A stretch of DNA of 64,000 nucleotides from the IMG/VR virus record IMGVR_UViG_3300042562_001598, positions 124,001 to 188,000 of that record; one strand, written 5' to 3'. Positions 9,772-34,600 of this stretch are shown piece after piece. The position numbers and the translations under genes were made by a program. A model generated the notes under the pieces. The model worked only from the letters and a program-made list of their open reading frames with translations, was not told the origin of the DNA and did not search any database. Within the stretch, counting starts at the first letter, position 1. Each line of letters begins with the position of its first letter.

Positions 9772-12700
9772 ATGGAAAAAAAGATAACATTAGGGAAGGC
9801 AATCAAAATTAAGGTTAAAGATTCGGTATCATCTTATGTGTGGAATAGGTTATATGAAAAATTAGATAAGTTAGTAAGTAATAAAATATATAATTCAACC
9901 ATTCATTTACAAAAAGAATCGGAGGTTTATGAGATGTATTACGCAATATGGTTGTCAATTAGGCGTAAATTATGAAAACAAAGATAGAATTAGGCAAATC
10001 GGTTATGAATGAAGTAAGGAGTTCAGTTAGGCGTTCAGTAAATATTTTAGTGAGTAATTCAGTGTGTGGTTCAGTGAGTAGTTCAGTGGATAGTTCAGTG
10101 AGGAGTATAGTGTGTGGTTCAGTAAATATTTCAGTGTATAATTCAGTATATGATTCAGTGGATAGTTCAGTGTGGAGTTCAGTATCTGATTCAATAAATA
10201 ATAATATATGAAAACAAAGTTAGTCTTGGGGAAACCAGTTAATGGTAATGTGGTTGAATCAGTTAAGAATTCGGTGTGGATTTTAACACATATTTCATTG
10301 TATCGTTCAGTGAATAGTTCAGTATACAATTCAGTGTTTAATTCGGTGTGGCGTCCAAGTTTTATATTATGAAAACAAAGATTAAATTGGGGGAATCGGT
10401 TAGGGTGTTACTGTATAAGTCAATAAGGAGTTCAGTTGATGTTTCACTGATGTTTACAGCGTATGGTTCAGTGCATAAGTCAGTGTGGACTTCAGTTAGG
10501 ACTTCAGTTCATAATCCAACAAATATTAGCATATGAAAACAAAGATAGACCTGGGGGAATCGGTTAAGGGTAAAGTTAGGAGTTCAGTGAGGGATTCAGT
10601 GAGACATTCAATATCCCCTTCAATGTACAATTCAGTTAAAAGTGTTCTGCATAGTGAAATATTTTCATCACTTGAGAATTCTATTAGGCATTCAGTTAGT
10701 AATTCAATCTATTGGACTATAGATAACTTCAATAAACTTTAGATTATGAAAACAAAGGTAGACCTGGGGAAATCAATTAAGGATAAAGTGTATGATTCAG
10801 TACTTAGTTCAGTGAGGAGTTCAGTGAATAGTTCAGTGTATGGTTCAGTTAGTAGTTCAGTGTATGATTCAGTGGGGAGTTCAGTGTATAGTTCAGTTAG
10901 GAATTTAACAAACATTAGATTATGAAAACAAAGATTACATTGGGAGAATCAGTTGAAGATAAGATTTTCCAAATAGTTACTGATGTGATTAGTAAAAAAA
11001 GTTATGACTTGTTAATCAGGGGAGTTTCATCAAATATGTTAAAGGGTGTTTCAGATGGGGTATATGATTACGCCTATAATTCAATATTACCTTCATTGAG
11101 TAGGGAAGTGTGGTTATTAGCGGTCACTAATTCAACAATAAAAAATTATGAAAACAAAGATAGACCTGGGGAAATCGGTTAAGTGTAAAGTGTATGAGTC
11201 ATTGTATTGTTCAGTAAATAGTTCAGTGTTTAGTTCAGTGAGTGGTTCAGAGATGCGTTCCGTTTGGAGTTCAATGAATAGTTCAGTGTGGATGTTAACA
11301 AATTTTAGATTATGAAAACAAAGATTAGATTGGGGAGGTCAGTTAAGGATAAAGTGAGGAGTTCAGTTTGGAATTTAGTTAGTCATTCATTGATGAGTTC
11401 CGTGCATGGTTCAGTGAAAAATCCAGTGTATTTTTCAGTAAGGAGTTCAATTTATGAATCATTAAAAATATAATATGAAAAATTTAGGTAATTCAATTAA
11501 AGATAATGTTGGGGATTTAGTTAAAGTTTCAGTTTGGCGTTCAACGAGTGAATTAATTAATGATTCAACAGGTGGTTTAACAATCCTTTCAACTTGGAAA
11601 ACAACAGGTCTATCATTACGAGATTCAGTTAGTAATTCAATTTATAATCAATTAAGAGTTCTTCAAGATGAAAATTAAAAAATTAGGAAAACCTGTTAAG
11701 CGTAAGTTGTTTAGTTCGGTAAATAATTTAATTTATTATTCAATAGGTGTTAAGCTCTATAAAGATAAGACTAGTAATATCTGGGATTTTGGTTACGAGT
11801 CAGTAAGAAAACCAATTGATAATTCAATAAATTTTAGATTATGAAAACAAAGGTAGGTCTGGGGAAATCAGTTAGTGATAAAGTGAGGAGGTCAGTGGAG
11901 AATTCAATTAAAAGTTCAGTTCGGTGTTCAGTAGATGATTTAGTGAGTAGTTCAGTGAGTTATTCAGTGAGGAGTTCAGTGATGAGTTCAGTGTATTGGC
12001 CAGTGTGTGATTTAGTGTGGAGTTCAGTGAGTATTTCAGTTAATATTTCAGTGTGGCGTTCAGTGAATATTTCAGTACATAATTCAGTAAGGTATTCAGT
12101 GAGTGATTCAATAATAAATAGTATATGAAAACAAAGGTAGACCTGGGTAAATCGGTTAAGGGTGAAGTATGGAATTTAGTTAATCATTCAGTGTATAGTT
12201 CAGTGTATGATTCAGTGAGTTGTTCAGTTAGTAGTTCAGTTATTGATTCAGTGGATGATTCGGTGTGGAGTTCCGTGCATGTTTCAGTTTGGATTTTATT
12301 ATATAGGTCAGTGGATGATTCGGTGTGGAGTTCAGTACATGGTTCAGTTAATAATTCAATAGAGGATAGTATATGAAAACAAAGGTAGACTTGGGAGAAT
12401 CAGTTAAGAATAAACTTAAGAATTCAGTGTGTAGTTCAGTTAGTCAGTCCGTGAGTATTTCATTTACAAGTACAAAATATTATTTAGTGGATAGGTCAGT
12501 CTATACATCACTGAAATGGTCAGTGAATGATTTGGTATGGTTCTCAGTGTATGAAATTATTTGTGATTCAATAGAAGATAAATTATGAAAACGAGGGTAA
12601 AATTAGGAAAATCAGTTAAGAATGAGGTTAAAGAATTAGTGTGTTGTAATGTGAATTTATTTTATTTTTCAGTGGGAAAATTTGTATATGATTTAGCTAG

Positions 12701-13395
12701 TGATAAAGTAAAAAATCCGGTGTACAGAACAAGCGATATAATATGGAGGTCGGTTCGTGACTCAACTATTCAATTTAATAAAAAATAGACTATGAAATTA
12801 GGAAAATCAGTTAAGTTTGAGGTGATTAAAGCGGTTGATGAAGGAATATTTGATGTTGTTACAGAATTGATTGATAACTCAATTAAGAATTTAGTATGGG
12901 ATTCAGTATTTTATTCAGTGTGGGATGCGATGAATGTTTCATTATTATCACCGATATTTGAACCAATAGAGGATAACTTATGGGAAGAAAATTAATATTA
13001 GGTAAATCAGTTAGTTATAGAGTTACTAATTCAATAGGTGATTCAATCTGGAGTATTAATTATGGGTCCATTAACCAGTTAGTGGATAGTTCAATTATTT
13101 TTCCAATAAAAGACTTATCGGAGGAAATATTAGATGATTTAGTATTTGGTTTGGTGAGTAGTACAATTAATATTTCAATAACAAATAGACTATGAAAACA
13201 AAATTAATATTGGGTAATTTAGTGGGAACCGAATTAAACAGGTCAATATGGGAATCAGTTAGAGTTTCAATTGAGATGAAAGTAGGTGTTTCAGTATGGG
13301 AAACAATAAACCAATCAGTTTATGAACCGATACAGGAAATAGTAAATGATTCAATCAACAACCAACTATATTGGTTAATAAAAAGTAAAGTATAA
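9772..13395 (+). CDS. SVxx-repeat small-protein array 1: 18 tandem, mostly ATGA-coupled paralogous genes
   Basis: Starts 9772, 9972, 10208, 10369, 10533, 10746, 10922, 11148, 11312, 11475, 11668, 11841, 12125, 12373, 12585, 12792, 12980, 13192 (five short ORFs read by hand); MKTKxxLGKSV head + S-V-x-x repeats. Confidence 0.88.
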
Positions 13396-13453
13396 GGATT
13401 GGATATAACAATTTCTTAACTTAATATAATGTAATTTTTATCTATTTATTTAT

Positions 13454-14158
13454 ATGGAGATGAAATTATCAATTATTATACCTTGTAAAAATGAAGAAAA
13501 ATATATAGGTAAATTATTAAATTCTTTATTACAACAAAATTTACCTCAAAATGTTGAGATAATAATAGCTGACGCTAACTCAACTGATAACACTATAAAA
13601 ATTATAAACTCTTATTTAGATTTACTACCTAACTTAAAAATTATTCCAGGTGGTTTACCATCAGTTGGTAGAAATTTAGGTGCTAAAGAATCAAAAGGTG
13701 AAATATTATTATTCATTGATTCGGATGTTTATTTTAAACGAGAAAATATAATCGTAAAATCTTTAGATACATTCAAGAAAAATAAAGCGGAGATATTAGG
13801 TTGTTTCTTAAATATTGAGAATAATCTTAAAGTGAAAATGGTGTATAAAATCTGTAATCTTATATTCTATTTATCAAAATTTGATAAACCATTTGTTGTT
13901 GGGTCATATATGATGATTAACAAAGATGTTTTCTTTAATTTAGGTGGTTTTGATGAAGAGTTGATGCACTGCGAAGATTACTTTTTAAGTAAAAAAGTTA
14001 ATCCATCCAAATATACTATAATAAATGAATATGTTTATACTGATGATAGGAGATTTATAAAATTAGGTATGTTAGGTATGATAAAATATTTTATTAAAAA
14101 CATAGTTGAAAAAAACAATAAAGATTATTTTAAACAAGATGTTGGATATTGGTTATGA
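13454..14158 (+). CDS. Family 2 glycosyltransferase
   Basis: LSIIIPCKNEE, IADANSTDNT, GRNLGA, LFIDSD (DxD), GGFDE..EDY. Confidence 0.92.
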   Translation: MEMKLSIIIPCKNEEKYIGKLLNSLLQQNLPQNVEIIIADANSTDNTIKIINSYLDLLPNLKIIPGGLPSVGRNLGAKESKGEILLFIDSDVYFKRENIIVKSLDTFKKNKAEILGCFLNIENNLKVKMVYKICNLIFYLSKFDKPFVVGSYMMINKDVFFNLGGFDEELMHCEDYFLSKKVNPSKYTIINEYVYTDDRRFIKLGMLGMIKYFIKNIVEKNNKDYFKQDVGYWL

Positions 14159-14874
14159 ATTATAAAACAGTTATTATTTCAGATTTACATTTAGGTTCAA
14201 CATATTCCAGGTCGGAAGATATCGCTAATTTTTTAGATAAAATTAAATGTGAGACCCTCATATTAAATGGTGATATTATTGATGGTTGGGCGTTAAAAAG
14301 AGGAAACGCTTGGACGCAGGAACATATGAAATGCGTTAGAAAACTTATGAAGAAATCTTATAAAACCAAAATATATTGGGTTAGAGGTAATCATGATGAT
14401 TTCTTACATGATTTTATACCATTAAATTTAGGTAATATTAGTCTTGTTGAAAATATGGACTTATACGGGTTAAATGGTAAAAAATATTTAGTTTTACATG
14501 GTGATATCTTTGATGTATTTGTAAATAAAATGAAATGGTTAGCGAAAATTGGTTCCGTTGGTTATGATTTTACACTTTGGTTGAATAAATGGTATAACAA
14601 ATATAGAGCATTTAGAGGTAAGGAGTATTTTTCATTATCTAAAAAAATAAAAGATTCAGTTAAGAGTGCGACCAACTTTATTGGGGATTTTGAGGACCAT
14701 ATGGTTAGTCATTCAAGGTCGTTAAACTATGATGGTGTTATATGTGGTCATATTCATAAAGCTGAGATTAGAGAAATAAATGGTATTGAGTATATGAATT
14801 CTGGGGATTGGGTTGAATCAAAAACCGCTTTAGTTGAATCTTATACAGGTGAATGGAGTTTGTTATATTATTAA
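14149..14874 (+). CDS. LpxH-like metallophosphoesterase (UDP-2,3-diacylglucosamine hydrolase family)
   Basis: ISDLHLG, LNGDIIDGW, RGNHDD, LHGD, CGHIH, NSGDWVE. Confidence 0.88.
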   Translation: MVMNYKTVIISDLHLGSTYSRSEDIANFLDKIKCETLILNGDIIDGWALKRGNAWTQEHMKCVRKLMKKSYKTKIYWVRGNHDDFLHDFIPLNLGNISLVENMDLYGLNGKKYLVLHGDIFDVFVNKMKWLAKIGSVGYDFTLWLNKWYNKYRAFRGKEYFSLSKKIKDSVKSATNFIGDFEDHMVSHSRSLNYDGVICGHIHKAEIREINGIEYMNSGDWVESKTALVESYTGEWSLLYY

Positions 14875-14993
14875 TAACTCTAACATAACAAAATAATTAA
14901 TTCCTCACTTATTAAAAAAGGTGAGGATTTGTTTTTTTATAACATTTTTTTTATTATATTTACTCATCTATTAATCTTAAAACATAAAAAACA

Positions 14994-15206
14994 ATGAAAA
15001 GAGTTATATTATTTTCTTCAACCTTATTTATTCTAACCGCATTAGTCGGAATCGTAATGACCTTAATCTTTGTTATAGCTCCAATTCCACCGGAAGGATT
15101 ATACGCTCAAATTCTAAAGTTTGATTTTATACTATCATTTGCATTTGCAATAATTATGATACTATGTGGTGCGTTTAACGAACTTATGGAAAAGTTAAAC
15201 GAATAA
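14994..15206 (+). CDS. Small two-TM membrane protein
   Basis: Two hydrophobic stretches in 70 aa. Confidence 0.65.
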   Translation: MKRVILFSSTLFILTALVGIVMTLIFVIAPIPPEGLYAQILKFDFILSFAFAIIMILCGAFNELMEKLNE

Positions 15207-15492
15207 AAAAACTTCCTCACTTATTAAAAAAAGGTGGGGAATTATTTTTTTATATAGTATTAAGTTGTATATTTGTTGAAAGAAAAAGTAAATATAAAAT
15301 CACAGAATTATGGAAGTTAAATATTGGGAAGATTGTAGGTCATTAAAAGAAATAACCGATGATGTTAAGGGTATGATATCAAGTGGTGAAATTAATGAAA
15401 TTATTTCATTAACACATAGTTCAATTATCAATGCTGCTTACGGGTTGATAAAGTATTCTGCGATTTTAGTTTATAAAAAAAATAAATAAGTT

Positions 15493-16217
15493 ATGAAAAC
15501 TCAATTTGCACCTGAAGAAATTACATTAGAATTAAAAGCGTTGGGTTTTGATGAGACTTGTTTTGGTTATTATGATGGTACTGGTTATGTAATGATAAAA
15601 GAAATTAAACATTGTGTAATATCCGCACCGACATTCGCTCAAGCGTTTAGATTTTTTAGAGATAAGTATGAGTTATATTATACTATAGAAGGTTCAAAAA
15701 AATATGGGTTTGCTTTTTTTATTTATTATGAAAACGATGATAAAGGTGAATTAAAATCTAAAGAATATTCTACCTACGAAGAAGCTGAACAGGAATGTTT
15801 AATTAAATTAATAGAAATCACTAAAGAAAAGAAATAATGGAAAATCAATTTGTTGGTTATAATGAAGCAAAACAATTAAGTGAGTTAGGTTTCAGTGAAC
15901 AATGTTTTGCTGGTTACTTAAAAGAAGAAAAAACTCTTTGGATTGGATATGTTAGTTCCCAGGGTGGGGAACAATTCAATAGAGAGTATCATATCTTAGC
16001 TCCAACATATTATCAAGCGGTAAAGTTCATCCGGGATAAATACAATTTATGTTACGCAATTGACCCCTACGATGATGGGACTTATGATTACACCATCTTC
16101 AACCCTTACATTACAGATGAGGAAGATTTTGAGGAAGGACCCTACAAAACCTACGAAGAAGCGGAACAGGCTTGTTTAGTCAAGTTGATAGTTATCAGCA
16201 AAGGACTGAAAAAATAA
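15493..16217 (+). CDS. Two paralogous hypothetical proteins (15493..15837, 15837..16217)
   Basis: Shared LGFxExCF, APTxxQAxxFxRDKY and TYEEAEQxCLxKLI motifs. Confidence 0.8.
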
Positions 16218-16306
16218 TAAATAAATTCCTCACTTATTAAAATAAAGGTGGGGAATTATTTTTTTATATGGATTATTAATCTATCTTTGTAAAAAGAAAT
16301 TTAGTT

Positions 16307-16957
16307 ATGGAAAACATACACATATTAACAACGTTAAAACCAAGTAGGATATTAAGAGGTCTTGATGGTATTAGAATATTTAAAAATGAGGTATCACCAG
16401 ATAGTGAGTGGTGTGTTAATGTAAATATACACATAACAAATGATGATGAAATTAAAGATGGGGATAAACGAATTAATAATTACCAAAGAAAACCTGAAGG
16501 GGAGGAAATCCCAAGTAAAAAAATCATCCTAACAACAGATGACCAACTAATTCAAGATGGAGTTCAACCTATTGATGATGAGTTTTTAGAATGGTTTGTT
16601 AAGAATCCAAGTTGTGAGGATGTTAAGGTTGTAAAAGAAGGTTACAAAAAGAATGATATGATTGATGAAGCTACTTCTTACATATACAAAATCATCATTC
16701 CAAAAGAAGAACAAAAGCAACATCTTATTGGTATGATGAAAGCAGATGAAGAGTTGGGATTATATGATGAAACAGAACACTTGTTATCAACTCAAGCGAA
16801 TAAAGAAAGGTTGTTAGAGGATGTGAAAGAAGAAACACAAAGAATGTATAGTGAGGAAGAAGTTATTGATTTACTACAAGAAATGAATGATTATCCAACA
16901 ATATTTGAAGGTAGAATTGATATTAAAGAATGGTTTGAACAACTTAAAAAGAAATAA
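16307..16957 (+). CDS. Hypothetical protein, paralog of 55867..56661
   Basis: NIHIL, KIIxTTD, DGxQxIDDxFLEWFVxNPSCE and YSEEEV..WFEQxKKK shared. Confidence 0.8.
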   Translation: MENIHILTTLKPSRILRGLDGIRIFKNEVSPDSEWCVNVNIHITNDDEIKDGDKRINNYQRKPEGEEIPSKKIILTTDDQLIQDGVQPIDDEFLEWFVKNPSCEDVKVVKEGYKKNDMIDEATSYIYKIIIPKEEQKQHLIGMMKADEELGLYDETEHLLSTQANKERLLEDVKEETQRMYSEEEVIDLLQEMNDYPTIFEGRIDIKEWFEQLKKK

Positions 16958-16961
16958 TATT

Positions 16962-19086
16962 ATGGATAAAAATGTGTTAGACTGGATTGTTGCAATGGAT
17001 TTTGCACATTATAAAACAGAAGAATTTCCTGATTATAAACCGTCAGGACCATCTCACTGGTACATTAAAGGTTCACCTGAAAGATTTACAAGTGAGGAAC
17101 TTATACAAATCTATAAAGGTGAGATGAATGATAAACTAAGAGAAAATTGGAATTGGGCATTAACAGATAAAAAGAAATAATATTATGGACTTTAGAACAG
17201 AACTAGCAAAATGGGGTTACAATAAAGGTGACTCAATTGATGTTGATATATTGGTTAATGAAATACTACCAAGTTTATTTTCTCAACAAGAAAAAAGTAA
17301 TAATAAGGAAGAAGTTTGGACTATGTGTAATGAACTGGGATATTATTTTATTGGTGGAGATACTGTTGATTTACAAGAGATAATTAAAGAAAAAAATAAG
17401 TTATGACACCAAAAGAAAAAGCGTTAGAATTGATAGAAAAATTCAAAATTAATGATTATGATTGGATTGCACAAGGTAATCTTTATTGTGTAAAACAACA
17501 TGTTTTGATTACTGTTGATGAGATATTATCAATGAAAATAGTCAGAAAAGACGACTTAACTGATGAGTATTGGGAAGCGGTAAAACAAGAAATACAAAAG
17601 TTATGACACCTAAATTTTTAAACAATTATGGTAATCAATTAATGGATAACCTTAAAGAAATAAAACAAAAACCGGAAAAAAGTTATAGTGAACAAGAAGT
17701 AACAGATTTATTAACAATGCAACGAGAAAATTGTTATGTTGCTATATTAGGTGAAACAAGAAATGATGAAATCGCAACAATCGCATTAAACGCTCCTGAA
17801 CCTGGGGGTAGAAACGGAAGTTGGAAAAATAATAAGTTATGAATAATACAGTTTATTTTCAACCACCAGGGATAAGACCACAATATTGTGAAGCTGGTAT
17901 GATTTCAGTTACGGACCCTGATTATATATGGTATTATGATGAACCTTGTAAGATATTAATAAGTGATGTTAAGATTATACCAAAAGAGAATGTTATTTAC
18001 GATAAGAAAAAAAGATTATATATTATTAAAGAGAAATAAGTTATGATACTACTGATAATATTTTTATACATTATACCCGTCATACTTTCTATAATAGTCA
18101 TATCTAATAATTCAGATGAAATGACGGTGGGGGATTTAATAGGTATAGTTTTAATATCTATAATACCAGTAGCTAATATATTCACAGCTTATGTTGGAGG
18201 ATTAATAGCTTTATGTCAATCAAAACAAGTAAATAAGTTTTTAAATAAAAGAATAAAATGAAACAAACAGCTGTAGAATGGTTAGTAGAACAATTATTTG
18301 AATTAAGAAATCCTACTTTAAATCAAATAGAAATAATGAAACAAGCCGAAAAAATGGAAAAGCAACAAATAATTGACGCTCATATAAAAGGTCATAACGC
18401 ACCATCAAGTACAATTAAAAATCACGATGCGGAACAATACTACAACGAGCGATTTAATAAGAAATAAGTTATGGAGTTATATGTGGAAATATTAAAAGTT
18501 ATTTTTTTTACTTTAACGGTATTGGCGATGGGACTTGTTGTTGCTGGATTAATGATAATGTTAATTAAAGAATATAAAAACAAATAAGATTATGAAAAAT
18601 ATATTATCAATAACGGTAGGATTAATATTCACACTTATAAGTTGTGAGAGTAGAGTTACAATTTCTCAATCAGAGTATGATAAATTAATAGGTATTAATA
18701 CTCAAACAAAAAGAACTATTACCTTTCCAGAAGGAAGTGTAGCAAAAAACATGGATTGGTATATAATTCAAGGTTCTGATGGTCATGACTATATGGAGAA
18801 TGGTGATGGAAGTGCTTATATATTAATGCACTACATAGAGTGTGACAAATGTAAAAAGAAATAAATGGAAAAAGAGATAATAAAACGAGGAAATGAAAGT
18901 GGTTATGAAACATTAATCATCCAAGGGAAATGGACCAGTTTGGAATTAACCTCGGTGGATAAAGATGGGGATATTGAGATTGAGTTAAACAATACCGACG
19001 AGAACATATCTCTATACCTTAATCAAAATGAAATAAAAGAGGTTATAGAGTTCTTACAGAAACAAATAATATCCCCATCCAATTAA
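16962..19086 (+). CDS. Cluster of about 10 small hypothetical genes (MTPKEKA-, MKQTAVEWL-type, a lipoprotein, membrane proteins)
   Basis: Tightly packed 60-90 aa ORFs; LISC lipobox in 18592..18864. Confidence 0.65.
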
Positions 19087-24196: not shown

Positions 24197-26760
24197 TTAG
24201 TTAAGTTCATCGTATATCTCCAGGGTAACAAGGTTCCATACCGGAAGTTCTATTGATTTATATGGGGGATTATAAATGGACTGGGGATAATCATACCTGG
24301 TCTTTATCCAAAGGGGTGTATCAATATTGAGACTTATTGAACTATACACTATACCCTTAACTGACTTCCCCAATGTAATCTTTGTTTTCATAATCTAAAA
24401 TTTGTTGAATTATTAACAGGGTCAACCAATAACCTCCATACTAAATCATATATTGGACCATGCACGGAACTCATCAATGAACGACTAACTGAACGCCACA
24501 CTGAACTCCTCACTTTATCCCTAACTGATTTCCCCAATCTAATCCTGGGGGTAATAACTTCTTTCATATACTATTCTTTATTGAATTATTAACTGAACCA
24601 TACACTAAATTCCACACTGAACTATATACTGAAATATTCACTGAACGCCTAACTGAACAACTCACTGAACTATGTACGGAACTATACATTGAATTATCTA
24701 CTGAACCATACACTAAATTCCACACTGAATTCCACACTAACTTATCCACCGGTTTACCCAATCTAATCCTGGGGGTAATAACTTCTTTCATATACTATTC
24801 TTTATTGAATTATTAACTGAACGCCAAGCTGAACTATACACTGAATCATATACTGAATTCTGCACCGAACTATCCACTGAACCACACACTATACTCCTCA
24901 ATGAAATATCCACTGAACTACTCACTGAATCATACACTGACCTCCTCACTTTACGATTAACCGATTTCCCCAAGACTAACTTTGTTTTCATAATATAAAA
25001 CTTGAACTCCACACCGAATTAAACACTGAAATATTTACTGAACCACACACTATACTCCTCACTGAACTATCCACTGAATAATACACTGACTTCCTCACTT
25101 TAACCTTAACCGATTTCCCCAAGACTAACTTGGGGGTAATAATCTTATTATCCATAATCTAAAATTTGTTGAACTATATACTGAAATATTCACTGAGCGT
25201 CTAACTGAAAACCAGACTGAACTATGTACTAAATCCCACAATGAACTACCCACTGAACTACTCAATGACCTATTCACTGACCTACTAACTGATTCCCCCA
25301 ATGTAATCCTGGGGGTTATTACTTCTTTCATAATCTATTCTTTATTGATTCACGTATTGGACGACTAACTGAACTCTTCACTGAACTATGCACTGACCTT
25401 TCTACTGAATGATACAATGAAATATCCACAGAACTACTTACTAAACGACTAGCTGAATAATCCCTCAATGAATGATACACTGAACGATTAATTGAATCCC
25501 ACAATTTATCCTTAACAGATTCTCTAATTCTAATCTTTGTTTTCATAATCTATTTATTATTGAACTCCTCACTGACCTTATCACTGAACTATTCACTGAA
25601 CGATACACTGAACGATACACTGAACGATATACTGAACTCCTAACAGAACCCCTCACTGAACGATTCACCGAACTATTCACTGACCTTATCACTGAACTAC
25701 TCACTGAACTATCCACTTTACCCTTAACTGACTTCCCCAATGTAATCCTGGGGGATATTACTTCTTTCATAATCTATTCTTTATTGATTCATTAACTGAA
25801 CCCTTAATTGAACTCCATACTGAATTAGTCACTGGTCTCCACACCGAATCATCCACTGACCTAACCACTGTAGTATTAACCGACCCCATACTTGAACCCA
25901 CCACATAATCATGTAGATAAACTCTCACTTTACGATTAACCGGTTTCCCCAATGTAATCTTTGTTTTCATAATATAAAATTTGTTAAACTCCTGATTGGA
26001 GAATCCACTGAACGCCTAACTGAAATATACACCGAACTACTCACTGAACTATATACTGAACCATGCACTGACCTTTCTACTGAACTATATACTGAACCAT
26101 GCACGGAATTATCTACTGAACTCAACACTAACTTATTAACCGACTTCCCCAATCTTATCCTGGGGGATATAACTTCTTTCATATTCTATTCTTTATTGAA
26201 CTATATACTGAATTACTCACTGAACTCTCCACTGAAGACCTTACCAATCTCCATACTGAATCATACACTGGAATATTTACTGAACCACACAATGCACCAA
26301 TCATTGACATATCCAGCGAACTTCTTAATTTATCACTAACTGACCTCCCCAATTTAATATTTGTATTCATTATTAAAAGTTGTTGGATACCACAATGAAT
26401 CACACACTGCATCACATACAGAATCACGCAATAACCAATTCACTGAACTATACACGGAACTATATACAGAATCGTACACTGTAATCCTAAGTGAACTACT
26501 TATTTCACCCTTAACCGGTTTCCCCAATCTAATCCTGGGGGTCATAACTTCTTTCATATTCTAATGTTTATTGAATTAGTCACTGACCTATATACTGAAC
26601 GATATACTGAACTACTCACCGAAATATCCACTGAACTCTTAACTGAATTCCTAACTGGTCTACTTACTGAATTAGCCACTAAATCATACACTGACCTACT
26701 TACTTTATCCATAACCAAACTCCCCAATCTTATCCTGGGGGTTATTACTTTACCATCCAT
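24197..26760 (-). CDS. SVxx-repeat small-protein array 2: 13 coupled paralogous genes
   Basis: Starts 26760, 26557, 26370, 26182, 25970, 25770, 25546, 25331, 25155, 24991, 24791, 24567, 24391; MKEVITPRIRLGKSV and MKTKITLGKSV heads. Confidence 0.88.
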
Positions 26761-26788: not shown

Positions 26789-26844
26789 ATCATTTATTCA
26801 TTACAATCCTAATCCATCCTGGGGGAATAACAATCCCTTATATA

Positions 26845-26925: not shown

Positions 26926-26939
26926 GTTATACAAAGATA

Positions 26940-27390
26940 CAAAACCCCCAGGTATAAACCAAACTTATATTCATAAAGTTATTAACATGACATATAGTCT
27001 GTTGATAACTTTCCCCCATTGTTAATAACTTCCTATTGTCAGTGCGTCAGGTTCATAACTTGTTAATAACTTCTAACCACCAGGGGAGGGAGCCACTTAA
27101 ATGGTTCATTATTAGGTTGTTATACCGGGCTGCCTGGGGCGTATGGGGGGGCGCTACCTACTGCCCCCGTATCCCCCTTCCTTCCTGCCCCCTGTCAAAG
27201 TGTCAGAAGGGGGGATAATCCCAAGAATGAAGTGTATGGGTAAAAAAAACTTTATAGGAAAATTGTTGGAAAAAGGTAAAATAAATTTCTGGAAAAAATT
27301 GGGGAAATGAGTCCCCCATTTACAGGGGTGGTTTAGAAATGATTTATGTATGTTTTTTCATTTTAGGTTATATTTATTATAAAAAAATAT
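26940..27390. other. Putative replication origin / DNA-handling site
   Basis: Divergent gene orientation; five GTT(A/G/C)ATAACTT-type repeats; GC-rich G/C-run block 27080-27220; A-tracts 27240-27310. Confidence 0.5.
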
Positions 27391-27393
27391 TAT

Positions 27394-27777
27394 ATGAAAA
27401 AAGTTATAACATTAACAGAAAACGATTTGGTTCGTTTAATTAAAAAAGTAATTAGTGAACAAATGAAAGTTGACGATTCAGAAGTTTCTCAATTTATTAA
27501 AACACCCAATAAATTAGTTATTCTTGATTTTACAGCTGAATGGTGTGGTCCTTGTCAAAAGATTAAAAAACATTTTGACGAGATTATTGAAAACCCTAAA
27601 TTGAGTAACAAATTTATTTTAGGTTCTTATGATTTTAGTTTTAGTTCACCGTTAGCGAAGAAATATAATATTCAAGGAATACCTTATGTTATGTTTTTTA
27701 GAAATGGTAAAATGATTCATAAGTTTGTAGGGTATAAAGACAAAGAACATATTGTTTCTTTAATACAGAAACTTTAA
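27394..27777 (+). CDS. trxA: Thioredoxin fused to an MKKVITLTENDL leader
   Basis: LDFTAEWCGPCQ, YNIQGIP. Confidence 0.88.
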   Translation: MKKVITLTENDLVRLIKKVISEQMKVDDSEVSQFIKTPNKLVILDFTAEWCGPCQKIKKHFDEIIENPKLSNKFILGSYDFSFSSPLAKKYNIQGIPYVMFFRNGKMIHKFVGYKDKEHIVSLIQKL

Positions 27778-27990
27778 TAATCCCCCTCTTCAACGGAGGG
27801 GTTTTTTATTTTCTATAAACACGAGCCCTTTATATATGGAGGGGTCAATAGTGAAAAAAAAATTCTGGGAAAATTTTCAGAAAAAGGGGATTAGTATATA
27901 TCTTCAACGAAAGGGGTTTTTTTATATCATCAATGTTGATTCTATAGTTTTTTATTTGTATGATTATATAAACCTTAAAATTTATATATT

Positions 27991-28281
27991 ATGTCAGAAC
28001 AAACGGAACAAAGTGTAAAGACCATTGCGGTATTTGTGAGAGAGTATTATGAAACATCTATTGTTAGAGAGCCTATTGAGTTGAATATTGGGGATTACCC
28101 TGAATTGGAGGGTATGACCCAGGATGAGGCAATTGATTATGTTGAATCTAACGCTTGGGAGATGAAAGCAACCATTGATGATTATGATTCACTTGCTGAC
28201 CAACTCAGTGATATGGATATTCGTAGAGATAAGATTACCAATGAGACCCAAGAGATTAATGCGGTTAAAGAAATGTTTTAA
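27991..28281 (+). CDS. Acidic hypothetical protein
   Basis: 96-aa ORF followed by a terminator. Confidence 0.7.
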   Translation: MSEQTEQSVKTIAVFVREYYETSIVREPIELNIGDYPELEGMTQDEAIDYVESNAWEMKATIDDYDSLADQLSDMDIRRDKITNETQEINAVKEMF

Positions 28282-28287
28282 TTAACT

Positions 28288-28702
28288 CCCCCAATTATTT
28301 TATAGTTGGGGTTTTTTTTATTTTATGATATATTTATATTTAAATAAAATTAAAAAATTAAAAACATGGGAAAAGTAATTAGATTAAGTGAAGACGATTT
28401 AAGTCGTTTGGTTAGAAAAATAATAAGTGAAGCGGTTATTGCTGAATCATTTGATGATGTTGTAAACTATTTAGGTATTACACCTAATGAAAAAGGGAAT
28501 ATAAGTTTTAATTATAACCCACAAACCGGTCTTTATTTGACAAATACTAAAAATAACAGGAATTGTATATTAAAAATTACTCCACCAAAAACTCAACCAA
28601 CTCAACCGGTACGATAAAAAAATATATATTATTTACACCCCCAATTATTTTATATAGTTGGGGTTTTTTTTATTTTATGATATATTTATATTTAAATAAA
28701 AT
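28288..28702 (+). repeat. ~63-bp direct repeat (terminator + TATTTAT motif) flanking 28366..28617
   Basis: cccccaattattttata(ta)gttggggttttttttattttatgatatatttatatttaaataaaat at 28288 and 28638. Confidence 0.88.
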
Positions 28703-29027
28703 AATTAAATTATTAAATATGAAAAAAGTAATAAGATTAACTGAATCCGATTTGATGAGGATTGTTAGAAGAGTGATTAAAGAGAATAACGCACCTGAAA
28801 GATATGTTATAGATATTGAAACGGGTAAAATGGTTGGAACACATCAATATGGTGTTGGTTTTACTGTAAATAAAATTGGTGAGAGAATGGGTTATGAATC
28901 AGACCCTGTTAGTATCCCTGATGGAACAAAGATGGAAGATAATGATAACTCCCCTATGAGAATGGACAGATTTAATGATAGAGCTGAAATGCCTCGTATG
29001 AGAAGGTATAATGATTCACTTGAATAA
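28366..29027 (+). CDS. Two leader-tagged hypothetical proteins (28366..28617, 28719..29027)
   Basis: MGKVIRLSEDDL / MKKVIRLTESDL leaders. Confidence 0.75.
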
Positions 29028-29139
29028 CATAAATTATTTATTAACCCCCATTTTCTTAATTGAACTTGGGGGTTTTTTATTTAATATAAATTTGTTTTAT
29101 ATGGGGTAATTATATATCTTTGTTGAAAATAAATTAGAT

Positions 29140-29640
29140 ATGAAAACAATAAAAGATTACATAGGTAAAGACTTTATATATGTTGAGCTTCCTGAAACTG
29201 TATATACCGTTAAAGAGTGTATTGGGGATTTTGTTAAGATAACTTGGGATAATCGTGATGTTCATTATCATATATCTCAAGTGACGGATTTTTTTGGTGA
29301 GGGTATTTGGGAATTAATTGATTCATCAGATGTTGAGATAAGTTATGATGGTGGGGATATGGAACGATTAGATACTGGACTCACCAGGAGAATTGATTAT
29401 AAGGATTGGGTTTTATATAAAGGGACTGAATATGTTAGGGAAGAAACTCTATTTCTAAAACATAAGTTAATTGATTTCCATACCATAACTTGGAAAGAAA
29501 GATTTGGGAATGTTGATGTGGAATTTTATACAGATGATAAAGGTTGGTCTAAAGATGGTTATCAGGATAAGAATAATCTCACCCCCGAGATTGAGTTGGA
29601 GTTTAAGAGAACAATTGGTAAGGACTTAATTTATAATTAA
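29140..29640 (+). CDS. Hypothetical protein
   Basis: TATCTTTG at 29115; 166-aa ORF. Confidence 0.7.
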   Translation: MKTIKDYIGKDFIYVELPETVYTVKECIGDFVKITWDNRDVHYHISQVTDFFGEGIWELIDSSDVEISYDGGDMERLDTGLTRRIDYKDWVLYKGTEYVREETLFLKHKLIDFHTITWKERFGNVDVEFYTDDKGWSKDGYQDKNNLTPEIELEFKRTIGKDLIYN

Positions 29641-29749
29641 TTATATTGGGGGGAAGATAATTTATTATATACCCCGGACTCGTTCCACTCGCAAAGAATC
29701 CCCGGCCCTTTTTTTGGATATCGGCATATTTATATTAATATAATAGATT

Positions 29750-30430
29750 ATGAAGATTATAATTACTGAAAGACAAAAGAATTTATTGACGGAGACCATA
29801 CCTGCAGCCATTCGTAGAAGGTTGGACTCGGAGTATATTCACGAGATTGCTGAGAATATTATTGAATATGATATTGACCCTTGTGAATGGGAAGATACTA
29901 ATGATTTTATTGTTGATTTTGCTGATTTGATTGTTCATAACATTATTATTGATATCAATGATGGTGAGGCAACATCCAAAGAGAAGGACTTATTATGGCA
30001 TTATGTGATTGATAATTTTGGTGGTTATATCAGAAACTTATATATTAGAGAATGTCAATAGATTATGAAAATATTAATTAAAGAAGGAATTGTAAAGAAA
30101 ATGGTTAATCGTGTGTTAGGTTACGACTTAACCGACCATATTGAAATGATTACCAGTTGGGAAGAGTTGGACGAATCATTGAAAGATAATGTATTCACTA
30201 TTAATAAAAGTACTTTTAATTGGACTCTTAATAATTATGGTCCAATGTTTTGTTTTAATATTGGTGATACCAAATTCCTAGTTCAGAATCGCCCTGATGG
30301 ATGGTATATACGTAGTGATAATGATGATTTACCTCTTAATATAGAGGATGATGAATTATTGGATTATATTGGTATTGGTTTTATGGGAGTTAAACTCCAA
30401 CAAGTAATTGATGAATTTGTAGAAGAATAA
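29750..30430 (+). CDS. Two leader-tagged acidic hypothetical proteins (29750..30061, 30065..30430)
   Basis: MKIIITERQ and MKILIKEG starts; TATTTAT at 29727. Confidence 0.75.
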
Positions 30431-30571
30431 AATAATAAACCCCCTTGATTGGGGGTTTTTTTATGTTTTGTATCGCCGTAGTGAGGTTAAACCTCACAAA
30501 ACAACTATGAAAGATAACATTTTGTTGAAAAATAAAATAATAAACCCCCTTGATTGGGGGTTTTTTATGTT
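30425..30571 (+). repeat. Duplicated terminator (~42 bp) enclosing a ~60-bp spacer
   Basis: aataaaa(a)taataaacccccttgattgggggttttttatgtt twice. Confidence 0.88.
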
Positions 30572-30639
30572 CATTATTTTTATTTGTTTAAGTATCTGAA
30601 CTTTTTTATAAATTGAACATATTTATAATAAAAGCTATT

Positions 30640-31083
30640 ATGAAAAAATGTACAAAATGTGGTGAAACTAAAGAATCGTGTAATTTTAGACCAAGAGGTA
30701 AAAGTTTGTTTTCCTGGTGTAAAAAATGTGAGTCAATTGGTAATTATGCAAGAGCTAAAGCGAAATATGTCCCAAAACCAATAAAACCTAAAGTCTTTAA
30801 GAGTGTTGAGGAAATAAGAATCGCGGCTAAGAAAAGAATGTTAAAGCACCGATATGGCATTACTTTAGCACAATATGAAGATATGTATACTAATCAAAAT
30901 GGGAAATGTGGTATATGTAAAAAAGACTATCATTTAGGAGGTTCAAAAGGGTTATTTGTTGACCATAACCATAAAACTATGGAAGTTAGAGGATTACTTT
31001 GTAGAAATTGTAATTCAGCTATTGGTCAATTATATGAGTGTAAAGATATACTAAATGAAGCTATCAAATATTTAGACCTTTAA
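30640..31083 (+). CDS. Endonuclease VII-like (His-Me finger) nuclease, probable free-standing homing endonuclease
   Basis: CTKC..CKKC N-terminal Zn motif; YGITLAQYEDM..QNGKCGIC; VDHNH; VRGLLCRNCNSAIG. Confidence 0.88.
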   Translation: MKKCTKCGETKESCNFRPRGKSLFSWCKKCESIGNYARAKAKYVPKPIKPKVFKSVEEIRIAAKKRMLKHRYGITLAQYEDMYTNQNGKCGICKKDYHLGGSKGLFVDHNHKTMEVRGLLCRNCNSAIGQLYECKDILNEAIKYLDL

Positions 31084-31183
31084 CGAAATACATACTTCAT
31101 AAATGTTAAACATAAAGAAGATAATTTCTTATGTACCCCGAACTCCCTCCGGTCGCGAGAAATCCCCAGCCCCTTTTTTGGTA

Positions 31184-31609
31184 TTATTTTGTTTTGCCCC
31201 AGGTCTTACCTTTTCCTTTGTCTTTACACTTGGCAGGCGTTGGTCTACAGGCCGGATATTTGCTCCTGGATTCACCTTCTTGTCTTCCGCAAGCTTTGTA
31301 TCCACCTTTTCCATCTGGTGCGTTACAATCAACCCATCCGCCTTGTTTTCCTTTTGGTCCTTTTCTTTTGAACCATTGATGTAGTGATTCCTTTTCTGTT
31401 ACTTCGGTTGATTCTTTAATATCCTTCCAAATATTTCCTTTTCTGCATCTAACGATTGCTCCGGATTTATATGCCGATGGTTTATCGTATTTTCTATCCG
31501 CAATTCTTTGGCATCTATCTTTTTTCTTTTCTTCAAGGACTTCGGTCTCAATAAGAATTTGGTTGATTATTCTTATCAAATCTGATTCCGTTAATTTTAT
31601 AACTTTCAT
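31184..31609 (-). CDS. Leader-tagged basic Cys-containing protein
   Basis: MKVIKLTESDL leader; PSAYKSGAIVRCRK and LHQWF..GGWVDC..CGR..KYPACRP modules. Confidence 0.7.
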   Translation of the reverse strand: MKVIKLTESDLIRIINQILIETEVLEEKKKDRCQRIADRKYDKPSAYKSGAIVRCRKGNIWKDIKESTEVTEKESLHQWFKRKGPKGKQGGWVDCNAPDGKGGYKACGRQEGESRSKYPACRPTPAKCKDKGKGKTWGKTK

Positions 31610-31638
31610 AATCGTATTTTAATTATAAATATTATGGA

Positions 31639-34600
31639 TTATCGTTTAAGCGACCCCCAAATTGAAAGATAAATGAACCTGGTTGATGTATCCCATAATG
31701 AAACATTGACTGATTTCCATAATGAACTATTAATAAATTCACCTGTTAAATCATGAACTGATGGGATAATTGATTCATATATACATGTTGAATTGCTTCT
31801 TGGTCCATTACCTAAAAACTTAACTGGTTTTCCTACTTTCATAACTTGGATATTCTAACTAATCTAATGGAATTATTAACTTTATCTTTAATTTGTTCAT
31901 AGATATAACCTTCAACGGGGTTATATGTTGATTCTGACACTGAATTACCTATTGGGCTATGTAATGACCAAAATATGGATGAAAATAATTTTCTTCTAAC
32001 GGATATAAGTTTTGTTTTCATGATAAAGTTTTCATTGGTAATGTTATTTCTCTTAAATTTTCCCAAATTGAACTATTAAATAAGTCTTTTTTTTGTTGAA
32101 TAACAAATAAATCTGCTGATTTTTTTAATAAAACATCTGTTGGAACATGTAATGACCAATTAACCTTACCAATAAGTCTATTTGCGACTGATTTCCCCAA
32201 CTTTGTTTTCATAACACTATCACCCATCTTGTTAAATTATTAATTGGTCTCCACACTGAAACATTAACAAAACCCCACACTGAATTTTTTGGTGCCATAT
32301 ATACCTCCTCGTTAACAGAATCTAAAACTGAATTATAGACTGAATTAACAATTACATTATTTATTTTATATCTAACTGGTTTCCCCAATTTTACCTTTGT
32401 TTTCATAATAAAGTTTTCATTAGTTCATCTATTGGGTCATATATTGTTTCATAAACTAAATTCGTCCCAGACCAAAACACTGAATTAGTTATTGTTTCAC
32501 TGACTGATTTATAAACCAACTTATCAACCGAATTAGTTATTGCAATACACAAAGAAATATTCAGTTTTTCATCAACAGGGTTCCCCAATTTTACCTTTGT
32601 TTTCATAAATTTATTCTCCATCTTGTTGAAGTATGTAATGGTGTAATCACCGAATTAACAACCAACTTATGAACTCCATTGCTAACTGATTCCCTAACAG
32701 AACTCCACACTGAATTAAACAATGAATTATTCACTGAATCATACACTGAACCATACACTGAATCACTCACTGAATCACTCACTGACCTACCCACTGACCT
32801 ATTCACTTTAGTCTTAACTGACTTACCCAATTTAATCTTTGTTTTCATAATATAATGTTTGTTAAACTTCTGATTGGAGAATACACTGAATCATCCACTA
32901 AGTTACTCACCGAAATATCCATTTCACTCCTAACTGGACAATACACTGACCTACTCACTAAACTATACACTTTATCCTTAACCGATTTCCCCAATATAAT
33001 CCTGGGGGATATTACTTCTTTCATATATTATTATTTATTGAAGTCCAAACCAAACTATGAACTGACCTACCCACTGAACGATACACTGAAGACCTTACCA
33101 ATCTCCTTACTGAATCATACACTGAAATATCTACTGAACTCCACACTAAATCATCTACTGTCCAAACCGTAGTATTAACCGACCCAATACTTGATTCCTT
33201 CACATAATTATGTAGATAAACTCTCACTTTATCACTAACTGATTTCCCCAAGACTAACTTGGGGGGTATTACTTCTTTCATATTCTATTATTTATTGAAT
33301 TAGTCACTGAACCACTTACTGAATTCCACACTGAACTTCTCACTGAAAGGTTTACTGAATTATCCAATGAATCATACACTAAACTCCACACTGAACCATA
33401 CACTGAACCATACACTTTATCTATAACCGACTTCCCCAATTTTACCTTTGTTTTCATAAATTTATTCTCCATCTCATTGAAATATTAATTGAATCTCTCA
33501 CTGAACTCCATACTGAATTAGTCACTGGAATACTCACTGAACTAACAATTGTATTATTTATTTTATATCTAACAGGTTCCCCCAATTTTACCTTTGTTTT
33601 CATAATGCTATTACCCATCTTGTTAAATCATTAATTGGTTCCATTGTTAATTTATTTGTATCCCATATTGAATCCCAAGCGACATCCTTTAATGAATTAT
33701 ATGTTGAAAAATTTACTGATGTATGAACTGATTCATATATTTCACGCCTAACCGATTCCCCCAATTTTGCTTTCATAACTTTAATTTCCACGCTAATGAT
33801 TCATCAATTGAACGCCTCACCGAACTTCTCACTGAACCCCTCAATGAAAGTTCCACTGTCTTATTCACAGGACTATATACTTCACTATATACTGAACCAA
33901 ACAATGAATTATCCACTAAACTCCAAACTGACTTACCTAACTCTAACTTTGTTTTCATAATTTATTTATTTATTGAATTATTAATAGGTTCAACTATTAA
34001 ATTTCTAATTGGAATCCAAACTAATCTCAAAACTGGACTCCACACTGAACTATGTATTGAACTACTTACTGAACTACTTACTAAAATAGTCACTGAACTA
34101 TTCACTGAATTATTAATTAATTCACTAACTGACTTACCTAACTCTATCTTTGTTTTCATAATCTTATTCTTATTAAACGACTAATTGAAATATTCACTGA
34201 ACTCTGTAATGAAGCCCACACTGAATCATTGATTAAACCAATTACTGAACTAACCAATGAACTATCCACAGAATAATACACCGAATCCCACACTTTCATT
34301 GAATTATTTATGTCACCCTTAACATTTTTACCTAACTCTAACTTTGTTTTCATAATCTTACACTCCATCTTGTTAAATCATTAATTTGTCTCCAAGTTGA
34401 ACGATATATTGAATTATATACTAGTTTTGATGTTGATTTCCTTATTGGATAATGCACTGAATTCTTCACTAATTGATACACTGACTTACCAACTGATTTT
34501 CCTAATCTAACCTTGGGGGTTATAACTTCTCCCATAATCTATTATTTATTGAATTACAAATAGGATTATATACTGAACTCCGCACTGAAATATGCACTGA

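What the first reader, a model, noticed from the sequence alone, without database searches (positions are those of the whole stretch)
10082..33281. Segments are shuffled between SVxx genes in different arrays (recombinational diversification without a reverse transcriptase)
Seen: a 56-bp block (ttcagtggatagttcagtgaggagtatagtgtgtggttcagtaaatatttcagtgt, 10082-10137) recurs identically, inverted, at 25023-25078 in array 2. There it is joined to a tail (..ttaattcggtgtgg..caagttttatattatgaaaacaaag) that in array 1 belongs to a different gene (about 10330-10380). Other swaps: KVRVYLH(D/N)YV..SS.GSVNTTV in 25767..25970 and 33021..33281; DKVRSSVW..VS.SLMSSVHG in 11312..11473 and 24388..24567; VYDSV.RLVRSSV in 26179.. 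and 33021..; MKTKVKLG.PVRYKI in 32209.. and 33454... Inference: the 12-bp unit and shared heads are recombination or gene-conversion handles that produce chimeric genes, like antigenic-variation cassettes.
Basis: partly seen in the sequence, partly recalled or inferred. Interest (0 to 1): 0.82.

Follow-up and report, generated by a model that had tools for sequence, protein, structure and literature searches.

The report
Recombining arrays of phage mini-genes
A 282-kb environmental phage carries about 53 tiny genes built from a 12-base (Ser-Val-x-x) repeat, in three arrays. Ordinary recombination at the shared gene heads and repeat units keeps cutting, pasting, duplicating and deleting them, but nothing shows a dedicated antigenic-variation-style switch.

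Summary

The window is part of IMG/VR contig 3300042562_001598, a 282-kb phage. It holds about 53 paralogous mini-genes of 49-95 aa: a conserved head (MKTKIxLGKSV), then (S-V-x-x)n, then a short tail. Most are joined by ATGA stop/start overlaps.

The paralogs do not form a tree:
- Head and tail distances are uncorrelated.
- No pair is similar over its full length.
- Three parent/child triplets give p<=0.0005.

Independent assemblies of close relatives show the process directly:
- Array 2 has 13, 10 or 2 genes, and array 3 has 21 or 14.
- In-frame fusions, head swaps and a one-gene indel occur.
- There is a one-unit (12-nt) insertion and a short conversion patch with its donor 36 nt away.

Other samples carry arrays 100% identical to the window, so change is evolutionary, not per-infection. 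There is no reverse transcriptase, no template/variable repeat pair and no silent-cassette layout.

Similar arrays, with their own heads and tails, occur in unrelated phage contigs. The same repeat occurs inside long DUF6745 proteins. Protein function is unknown; AlphaFold predicts a helical hairpin.

The parts
9772..13395 (+). Array 1: 18 tandem mini-genes (head MKTKIxLGKSV, then (SVxx)n, then tail). Most are joined by 4-nt ATGA overlaps.
   Evidence: ORF lists; 12-nt periodicity from TRF; alignment A2.
24197..26760 (-). Array 2: 13 tandem mini-genes. Many carry the longer head MKEVITPRIRLGKSV.
   Evidence: The same locus has 10 genes in L093 and 2 genes in L090.
31639..35671 (-). Array 3: 21 tandem mini-genes. 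SV-poor members at the ends are conserved; SV-rich members in the centre vary between relatives.
   Evidence: L080 has 14 genes here; L087 and L090 have different sets.
36473..36688 (+). Lone divergent family member (MPKTRLIIGKSM...), conserved at 87-100% in relatives.
10082..10137 (+). 56-bp exact block inside gene 9972-10211, shared with array 2.
   Evidence: shuffle controls.
25023..25078 (-). Inverted copy of the 56-bp block, inside gene 24988-25155.
24988..25155 (-). Chimeric gene. Its head resembles 24788 and 33021, its middle is the 9972 block, and its tail is the 10208 tail.
   Evidence: Segment painting; triplet test p=0.0002.
33021..33281 (-). Chimeric gene. The N-part resembles 25767 (90% over 63 nt) and the C-part resembles 26179 (95% over 56 nt). 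The next gene, 32845, has a head like 25543 and a tail like 25967. This matches an unequal-crossover duplication copied from array 2.
   Evidence: p=0.0003. The gene is present at 98% aa identity in L090 and L091 and absent from L080 and L087.
24529..24938 (-). Gene-length (224-nt) tandem duplication with a 66-bp exact tail-plus-head junction repeat (24533-24598 and 24757-24822).
10533..10742 (+). One whole gene that is absent from the near-identical contig L226. The joint lies in the tail/head junction.
25543..25770 (-). Gene that gains exactly one 12-nt unit (SVNS) in contig L221.
26062..26082 (-). Short conversion patch. The L221 allele is identical to the paralogous stretch 36 nt away (26098-26118) in the same gene.
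10830..10843 (+). Four substitutions within 14 nt. These are the only differences between L224 and the window over 6240 nt.

Best explanation
The region holds a lineage-specific multigene family of about 53 small protein-coding genes in a 282-kb phage. It evolves by ordinary homology-driven recombination, not by a dedicated diversifier.

Each gene has three parts:
- a conserved head (MKTKIxLGKSV, or an extended MKEVITPRIRLGKSV);
- a run of 12-nt units (TCA GTG NNT NNT, giving S-V-x-x);
- a short tail that overlaps or abuts the next gene's start.

Heads, tail-plus-head junctions (exact repeats of 29-66 bp) and the in-frame 12-nt units recur dozens of times on both strands of a 26-kb stretch. 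Recombination between misaligned copies, replication slippage and short-tract gene conversion therefore keep producing several kinds of change:
- whole-gene gains and losses (an accordion);
- in-frame chimeras and head swaps;
- changes in unit number;
- transfers between arrays.

Because the unit is four codons, nearly every such event leaves an intact ORF.

Shown here: the mosaicism, the position of the joints, the copy-number and chimera differences between close relatives, purifying selection on the stable members, and the absence of DGR or cassette features.

Inferred: the proteins are dispensable accessory proteins, predicted helical hairpins and possibly host-interaction factors. The variation may be kept by selection or may simply be tolerated.
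For: Coding status:
- Conserved starts and ATGA overlaps.
- pN/pS of 0.06-0.5 for most stable orthologue pairs. The pooled value is about 0.42, which is my own sum of the rows after leaving out one misaligned pair.
- No Rfam family matches.

Propagation at the DNA level:
- Ser in SV is coded TCA 78% of the time, against 35% in the background.
- Val is coded GTG 52% of the time, against 9% in the background.
- Other Ser codons are AGT 70% of the time.

Not tree-like:
- Mantel test of head against tail distance gives r=0.11, p=0.08.
- The nearest paralog by head and by tail is the same for only 4 of 46 genes.
- All similarity of >=88% between paralogs is segmental, 30-88 nt long.
- Triplet tests give p=0.0002-0.0005.

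Joints seen directly:
- The L087 fusion is gene 34922 nt 1-140 at 100% identity, joined in frame to the 34520 body.
- Head-region crossovers are seen.
- In L093 the same bodies carry different heads.

Copy number:
- Array 2 has 13, 10 or 2 genes.
- Array 3 has 21 or 14 genes, between flanks that are 95-98% identical.

Near-identical genomes differ by a one-gene indel, a 12-nt unit insertion and a conversion patch whose donor lies 36 nt away. L090 and L091 also differ by 5 substitutions within 13 nt.

Similar arrays with genome-specific heads and tails occur in L213 (25 genes), L153 and L207.
Against: - Several dense substitution patches have no donor in this window. They may come from allelic exchange between co-infecting strains rather than from paralog conversion.
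- Substitutions are not visibly denser inside the arrays than in nearby intergenic hot spots. This is my reading of the difference positions listed; it was not computed.
- One triplet test (gene 32845) was not significant.
- Two variant contigs, L081 and L221, change at or near their ends, where metagenome assemblies can be chimeric.
- No reads, no expression data and no function. Whether the diversity is adaptive is untested.
Confidence: 0.78

Rival explanations
1. This is a programmed diversification system comparable to antigenic-variation cassettes. The arrays would be a library whose segments are moved at high frequency, by dedicated machinery, into expressed genes, so that each burst of phage carries new variants.
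For: - In-frame 12-nt units and conserved handles make nearly every exchange productive.
- Segments move between arrays on opposite strands.
- Similar arrays recur in unrelated phages, which could point to selection for the architecture.
Against: - All members are intact, start-codon-bearing ORFs in coupled arrays. There is no expression-site and silent-cassette asymmetry.
- Arrays are 100% identical over 1.9-6.2 kb in independent samples (L092, L223, L227).
- No recombinase or reverse transcriptase turned up in the roughly 27 window ORFs of 153 aa or more that were scanned.
Confidence: 0.1
2. The pattern comes from whole-gene duplication followed only by point mutation. The shared blocks would be slowly diverging remnants, giving a clean tree.
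For: Tandem organisation and a 224-nt gene-length duplication.
Against: - Head and tail distances are uncorrelated.
- A 56-nt exact block sits between poorly matching flanks.
- Triplet breakpoints are significant.
- Chimeric joints are visible between relatives.
Confidence: 0.03
3. The repeats act as DNA or RNA, for example as binding-site arrays or structured transcripts, and the ORFs are incidental.
For: - The TTCAGT core is conserved beyond what the amino acids require.
- The reverse strand is also open, for example 10027-10329.
Against: - Conserved ATG heads, stop/start overlaps, and indels in multiples of 3 or 12.
- pN/pS below 1.
- No Rfam hit.
- The same tetrapeptide repeat is embedded in long proteins with globular domains.
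Confidence: 0.05
4. Diversification is by a diversity-generating retroelement or another mutagenic mechanism.
For: Variation is concentrated at 5 of the 12 positions of each unit.
Against: - No reverse transcriptase among the window ORFs scanned.
- No template/variable repeat pair; the longest repeats within the arrays are <=66 bp.
- In the patches printed, the differences are not confined to adenines.
Confidence: 0.02
5. The shared blocks and chimeras are metagenome assembly artefacts.
For: Short-read assemblers can mis-join repeats. L081 and L221 change near their contig ends.
Against: - The same genes are recovered letter for letter on 15 and 12 contigs; those fetched come from several samples and pipelines.
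- Several of those contigs are 99.9-100% identical to the window.
- The chimera 33021 is found at 98% in L090 and L091.
- The repeats are shorter than the k=141 that the k141_ contig names of the ENA contigs suggest.
Confidence: 0.02

Closest known systems
Tandem multigene families of large DNA viruses that expand and contract by unequal recombination. Examples from my own knowledge, not tested here: poxvirus 'genomic accordions' and the African swine fever virus MGF families.
   Same: Tandem paralogs. Copy number differs between close relatives. Chimeric genes sit at the joints. The variable genes are probably accessory.
   Different: Here the genes are only 50-95 aa and are themselves built from a 12-nt repeat, so recombination acts at three nested scales: unit, head and whole gene. 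The virus is a phage, and there are three arrays on both strands.
Antigenic-variation cassette systems of bacteria, such as Borrelia vlsE/vls and Neisseria pilE/pilS (from my own knowledge).
   Same: Segmental, RT-independent gene conversion between related copies yields mosaic coding sequences.
   Different: There is no single expression site and no promoterless silent cassettes. Every copy is a complete ORF in a polycistronic array. No high-frequency switching is seen, since arrays are identical across samples.
Long proteins with (D/N)SVx tetrapeptide repeats and a C-terminal DUF6745 domain (Pfam PF20530), mostly viral.
   Same: The same S-V-x-x repeat, with W, R, D, N or G at the x positions. 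The family profile hits them at E down to 5e-43. The repeat often opens with an L-G-x-S-V-like start.
   Different: The window genes lack the N-terminal and DUF6745 domains. They are stand-alone repeat mini-proteins in arrays. DUF6745 has no known function and appears in no paper in the library.
Polymorphic internal-protein loci of T-even phages, where small genes share a conserved N-terminal capsid-targeting sequence (from memory, not checked in a paper).
   Same: Small, variable phage genes share a short conserved N-terminal head that could also serve as a recombination handle.
   Different: There is no sequence similarity, no evidence that the head here is a targeting or cleavage signal, and far more copies.
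African swine fever virus B602L central variable region, made of 12-nt tetrapeptide repeats.
   Same: A 12-nt coding repeat. There are weak Foldseek resemblances (TM 0.71, but E about 4).
   Different: The match is not significant. B602L is a single gene, not an array of mini-genes.

Membership tests
Diversity-generating retroelement (DGR) | A reverse transcriptase gene next to the variable gene. | tested here: not met
   No RT domain in the roughly 27 window ORFs of 153 aa or more that were scanned with Pfam or PHROGs. The rest of the 282-kb genome was not seen.
Diversity-generating retroelement (DGR) | A template/variable repeat pair of about 100 bp or more that differs only at template adenines. 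| tested here: not met
   The longest repeats within the arrays are <=66 bp. Differences in the variant patches printed involve all bases.
Antigenic-variation cassette system (vls/pilS type) | One expression site plus silent, truncated or promoterless donor cassettes. | tested here: not met
   All of the roughly 53 members have start codons, conserved heads and stops, and are coupled by ATGA overlaps.
Antigenic-variation cassette system (vls/pilS type) | High-frequency switching within a clonal population. | tested here: inconclusive
   Consensus assemblies from other samples are 100% identical over 1.9-6.2 kb of the arrays, while others show indels and patches. Read-level data were unavailable.
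Tandem multigene family evolving by unequal crossing-over and gene conversion | Tandem paralogs with copy-number differences between close relatives. | tested here: met
   Array 2 has 13, 10 or 2 genes. Array 3 has 21 or 14 genes between flanks 95-98% identical. A one-gene indel is seen at >=98% identity.
Tandem multigene family evolving by unequal crossing-over and gene conversion | Chimeric genes whose joints lie in homologous sequence, with discordant histories along the gene. | tested here: met
Tandem multigene family evolving by unequal crossing-over and gene conversion | Short conversion tracts with an identifiable paralogous donor. | tested here: met
   The L221 allele at 26062-26082 equals 26098-26118 exactly. 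The 56-nt exact block lies between diverged flanks.
DUF6745 (PF20530) proteins | A C-terminal DUF6745 domain of about 200 aa. | tested here: not met
   No Pfam hit in any window member tested. The domain is present in the long hits P0094, P0096, P0097 and P0099.
DUF6745 (PF20530) proteins | A central S-V-x-x tetrapeptide repeat. | tested here: met
   Profile matches with 3-5 stretches per protein at E 1e-30 to 5e-43. Common descent or convergence of a low-complexity repeat cannot be told apart.

The most novel reading that the evidence does not exclude
The architecture itself may be selected. On this reading, a four-codon unit plus conserved heads and junctions forms an RT-free, always-in-frame recombination scaffold. 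It would let large phages keep a combinatorial, fast-turning-over repertoire of small helical-hairpin proteins, for example decoys or inhibitors aimed at variable host defences or surface systems. It may have arisen several times, or spread, among unrelated phages (L213, L153, L207), possibly by budding off the repeat region of DUF6745-type proteins.
Probability: 0.2. Interest if true: 0.8.

Novelty: new variant of a known kind. Interest (0 to 1): 0.55.

Why it matters
This is a clear natural example in a phage of recombination acting at three nested scales: the 12-nt unit, the gene head and the whole gene. The intermediate forms are preserved in public assemblies of close relatives.

The family is uncharacterised and has no Pfam, PHROG or PDB match. 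Even so, its profile finds 1,916 cluster representatives. It also forms arrays of up to 25-45 genes in other phages, so it is a sizeable piece of viral dark matter.

If the proteins turn out to be host-interaction factors, the arrays would be a new kind of rapidly evolving phage arsenal. If not, they remain a useful model for how short coding repeats seed gene families.

Tried and rejected
Searches that found nothing useful:
- Pfam, PHROGs and PADLOC scans of members gave nothing significant.
- PDB sequence search found nothing for the family profile. The DUF6745 protein P0099 gave only one marginal hit, E=0.007.
- Foldseek against BFVD had a best E of 0.9.
- The ESM Atlas returned only unnamed viral clusters.
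- Megablast against GenBank phages gave no match.
- Literature searches for DUF6745 and for similar phage arrays gave nothing relevant.

Leads that did not help:
- Relatives at 57-76% aa identity next to the GT2 gene and 58-73% next to the HD gene have no arrays at those positions, so they gave no orthologous comparison.
- The sigma-70 promoter scan was uninformative, with fewer hits than in shuffles. The few terminator-like hits inside the arrays look like chance matches to the head motif.
- The DNA pattern TTCAGT x4 at a 12-nt period mostly returned unrelated simple repeats, including in giant-virus bins. Only a minority are true SVxx genes.

Weak or ambiguous results:
- The head-type by tail-type table was crude and is not relied on.
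- The first MAFFT triplet for gene 24988 was out of register. It was redone with fixed offsets.
- The triplet for gene 32845 was not significant.
- The idea that array 1 and array 3 recombined to invert the segment between them (L081) does not fit the window's gene order and may be an assembly effect.
Full report
**Context**

The window is about 30% G+C. It is part of IMG/VR contig IMGVR_UViG_3300042562_001598, which is 282,192 bp long. Loci L001 and L074 match it at 99-100%. Other genes in the window are typical of a large phage:
- three tandem C5 DNA methylases, one of them interrupted by an intein;
- N6/N4 methylases;
- thymidylate synthase;
- ClpP;
- a GT2 glycosyltransferase;
- metallophosphoesterases;
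- a lysozyme-like protein.

No tRNA and no Rfam family was found.

**The objects**

Three blocks of very short, tightly packed ORFs lie at 9772-13395 (+), 24197-26760 (-) and 31639-35671 (-). A lone divergent copy lies at 36473-36688. There are about 53 genes of 49-95 aa.

- Each gene starts with MKTK(I/V)xLGKSV, or with an extended MKEVITPRIRLGKSV.
- It continues with 3-19 copies of S-[VIL]-x-x.
- It ends in a few tail types (NxRL, xFIL, RWxxL, NSI).
- Most neighbours overlap by ATGA.

Tandem Repeats Finder reports a 12-nt period, and multiples of it, in the SV-rich members. The unit is TCA GTG NNT NNT.

Codon use depends on position in the unit, far beyond what the amino acids require:
- Ser of the SV pair is TCA in 78% of cases, against 35% in the background.
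- Val is GTG in 52% of cases, against 9% in the background.
- Other serines are AGT in 70% of cases.

So the units share descent or homogenisation at the DNA level.

The ORFs behave as coding sequence:
- Stable orthologue pairs between the window and relatives have pN/pS mostly 0.06-0.5.
- The pooled value is about 0.42. This is my own sum of the rows, leaving out one pair that was misaligned by 3 nt.
- Length differences are multiples of 3 or 12.

AlphaFold2, run on the 52-member alignment, predicts a two-helix hairpin (H7-34, H41-78; pLDDT 78).

**Checking the observation**

- The 56-bp block is exact at both sites.
- In gene 24988-25155 it is followed by a tail 91% identical to that of a different array-1 gene (10317-10372).
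- All the other peptide sharings are present.
- When the 12-nt units are shuffled, the longest inter-gene exact match is at most 35-45 nt in 200 trials, against 56 observed.
- Matches of >=20 nt are 3-10 times fewer in the shuffles than observed.
- The exact proteins of both block-bearing genes are on record on 15 and 12 contigs, and those fetched come from several samples.
- Several of those contigs are 99.9-100% identical to the window.

The sequence is therefore not an assembly artefact.

**Mosaic, not tree-like**

- At >=88% identity no two paralogs match over their full length. Every relation is a 30-88-nt segment, and many genes are painted by several different partners.
- Head and tail distance matrices are uncorrelated (Mantel r=0.11, p=0.08).
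- Only 4 of 46 genes have the same nearest paralog at both ends. For example, 24197 is 7% from 25543 at the head and 89% from it at the tail.
- Breakpoint tests on gap-free informative sites give:
  - p=0.0003 for 33021 = 25767 (N) + 26179 (C);
  - p=0.0005 for 24388 = 24564 (head) + 11312 (body);
  - p=0.0002 for 24988 = 9972 block + 10208 tail.
- A fourth triplet, for gene 32845, was not significant.
- The chimera 33021 is followed by gene 32845, whose head resembles 25543 and whose tail resembles 25967. The pattern "gene-5 N-part / gene-3 C-part, then gene 4" is what an unequal-crossover duplication of array 2 would leave. In the window it sits in array 3.

**Relatives show the events**

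Contigs from other samples have flanks 93-98% identical to the window (L080/L093, L081, L087, L090, L091, L083-85).

Array 3 has 21 genes in the window and 14 in L080.
- The SV-poor genes at the ends, plus a few in the middle, are orthologous at 85-100% aa identity.
- The SV-rich central genes (34520, 34156, 33962, 33773, 33021, 32845, 32603, 32209) are missing, replaced or rearranged.

Array 2 has 13 genes in the window, 10 in L093 and 2 in L090.

Several joints can be read directly:
- L087 9085-9414 is gene 34922 nt 1-140 at 100% identity, fused in frame to the body of 34520. One gene and two half-genes are deleted.
- L080 7794-7967 has the upstream region and head of 34520 joined to the body of 34350, within the shared LGKSV sequence.
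- Window gene 33278 equals the head of L090_8298 plus the body of L090_8726. The two are separated in L090 by about 430 bp, one intervening gene.
- In L093 the bodies of 25767 and 24788 carry the MKEVI-type head instead of MKTK.
- L090 holds the body of 32845 under two different heads.

**Near-identical genomes**

Contigs that are 98-100% identical to the window give a population-like view.

Stable arrays:
- L223 and L227 are 100% identical over array 1.
- L092 is 100% identical over 31112-35494.
- L217 and L222 are 99.9% identical over array 2.

The arrays are therefore stable on short time scales.

Variants:
- L226 lacks exactly one gene (10533-10742), with the joint in the tail/head junction.
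- L221 has one extra 12-nt unit in gene 25543.
- L221 also has a 4-substitution patch at 26062-26082 that is identical to the paralogous stretch 36 nt away in the same gene. This is a conversion tract with its donor in view.
- L224 differs from the window at only four positions in 6240 nt, and all four fall within 14 nt of gene 10746.
- L090 and L091 are 99.74% identical over 8.5 kb, yet they differ by 5 substitutions within 13 nt of one SV gene. The L091 patch is close to the window allele.

Caveats:
- Other dense patches replace whole heads with alleles seen in other strains. These may reflect exchange between strains rather than between paralogs.
- Reading the difference positions, substitutions are not obviously denser inside the arrays than in nearby intergenic hot spots. 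It is the structural change that is special.

**What it is not**

- No reverse transcriptase was found among the window ORFs scanned.
- There is no template/variable repeat pair.
- There is no adenine-specific pattern of differences.
- There is no expression site with silent cassettes. All copies are complete and coupled.
- No internal terminators were found, and promoter consensus hits are below the shuffle expectation.

**Wider distribution**

- The family profile finds 93 small unnamed metagenome proteins.
- In the exhaustive library it finds 1,916 representatives.
- The best of these are 400-500-aa proteins with very long (D/N)SVx repeats between an N-terminal domain and a C-terminal DUF6745 domain. 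No paper in the library mentions that domain.
- L079, a more distant relative, has about 42-45 mini-genes in one array.
- Unrelated IMG/VR contigs hold arrays of the same design with their own heads and tails:
  - L213 has 25 genes of the form MILGKSIKDKV...PKIKL.
  - L153 has 5 genes.
  - L207 has 4 genes.
- Head-plus-tail identity within L213 is 0.66, against <=0.37 between genomes. That is a concerted-evolution signature.

**Mechanism and verdict**

The analogy with antigenic-variation cassettes is not supported. This is a tandem mini-gene family under unequal crossing-over, slippage and gene conversion, evolving by birth-and-death with partial homogenisation. The four-codon unit keeps the products in frame.

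Function is unknown. I infer accessory small helical proteins, and I assign about 20% to the reading that the architecture is itself selected as a diversity engine.

Noticed in passing
window 2623-7123: Three tandem C5 cytosine DNA methylase genes. The third (5195-7123) is interrupted by an intein with Hint and LAGLIDADG-like domains. An 86-bp exact repeat spans the gene junctions at 4248-4333 and 5129-5214.
   Followed up: partly
window 36894-39323 and 42255-42730: A second paralog family of 186-209-aa proteins with leucine-rich-repeat-like units, sharing many exact repeats of 25-60 bp. Its copy number and order differ in L080, L087 and L090.
   Followed up: partly
L080 12736-13908 (between window 39929 and 39972): The relative carries a TnpB/IS605 OrfB-type gene (Cas12f-like TNB domain) that is absent from the window.
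   Followed up: no
window 13203-14955 compared with L083 3427-3459: The last array-1 gene, the GT2 glycosyltransferase and the metallophosphoesterase are all absent from the otherwise 93-97% identical contig L083.
   Followed up: no
window 30582-31112; hairpins at 30437-30458, 30542-30563, 28289-28311 and 28639-28663: A 530-bp segment that is missing in L092, which is otherwise 99.8-100% identical. Duplicated terminator-like hairpins and a 50-bp exact repeat (28301-28350 and 28653-28702) lie nearby.
   Followed up: no
window 46045-47292: The thymidylate synthase is 415 aa, and the Pfam match is split into two stretches. This suggests an insertion of roughly 100 aa or more.
   Followed up: no
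L081 1-527 compared with L080 6750-7281: Two contigs are 99.97% identical over 12.9 kb but diverge completely inside array 3. L081 continues with genes that resemble array 1 (the 12373 and 10746 types). This is either a real inter-array rearrangement or a chimeric contig end.
   Followed up: partly
L221 2297-2554: The end of this array-2 variant contig runs into an ORF unrelated to the mini-gene family. To my eye it looks like an ABC-transporter fragment, but it was not scanned. The contig is probably chimeric at its end.
   Followed up: no
window 10027-10329 (-), 32855-33172 (+) and others: Long ORFs on the strand opposite the arrays (LTEL/YTE repeats) follow from the stop-free repeat and are probably not genes.
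   Followed up: partly
P0135, and loci L104, L148, L150, L160, L197, L200: A further class of 230-290-aa phage proteins has SVxx repeats between an N-terminal domain and a conserved C-terminal '...WRLHSG...' module. P0135, the only one scanned, has no Pfam family.
   Followed up: no
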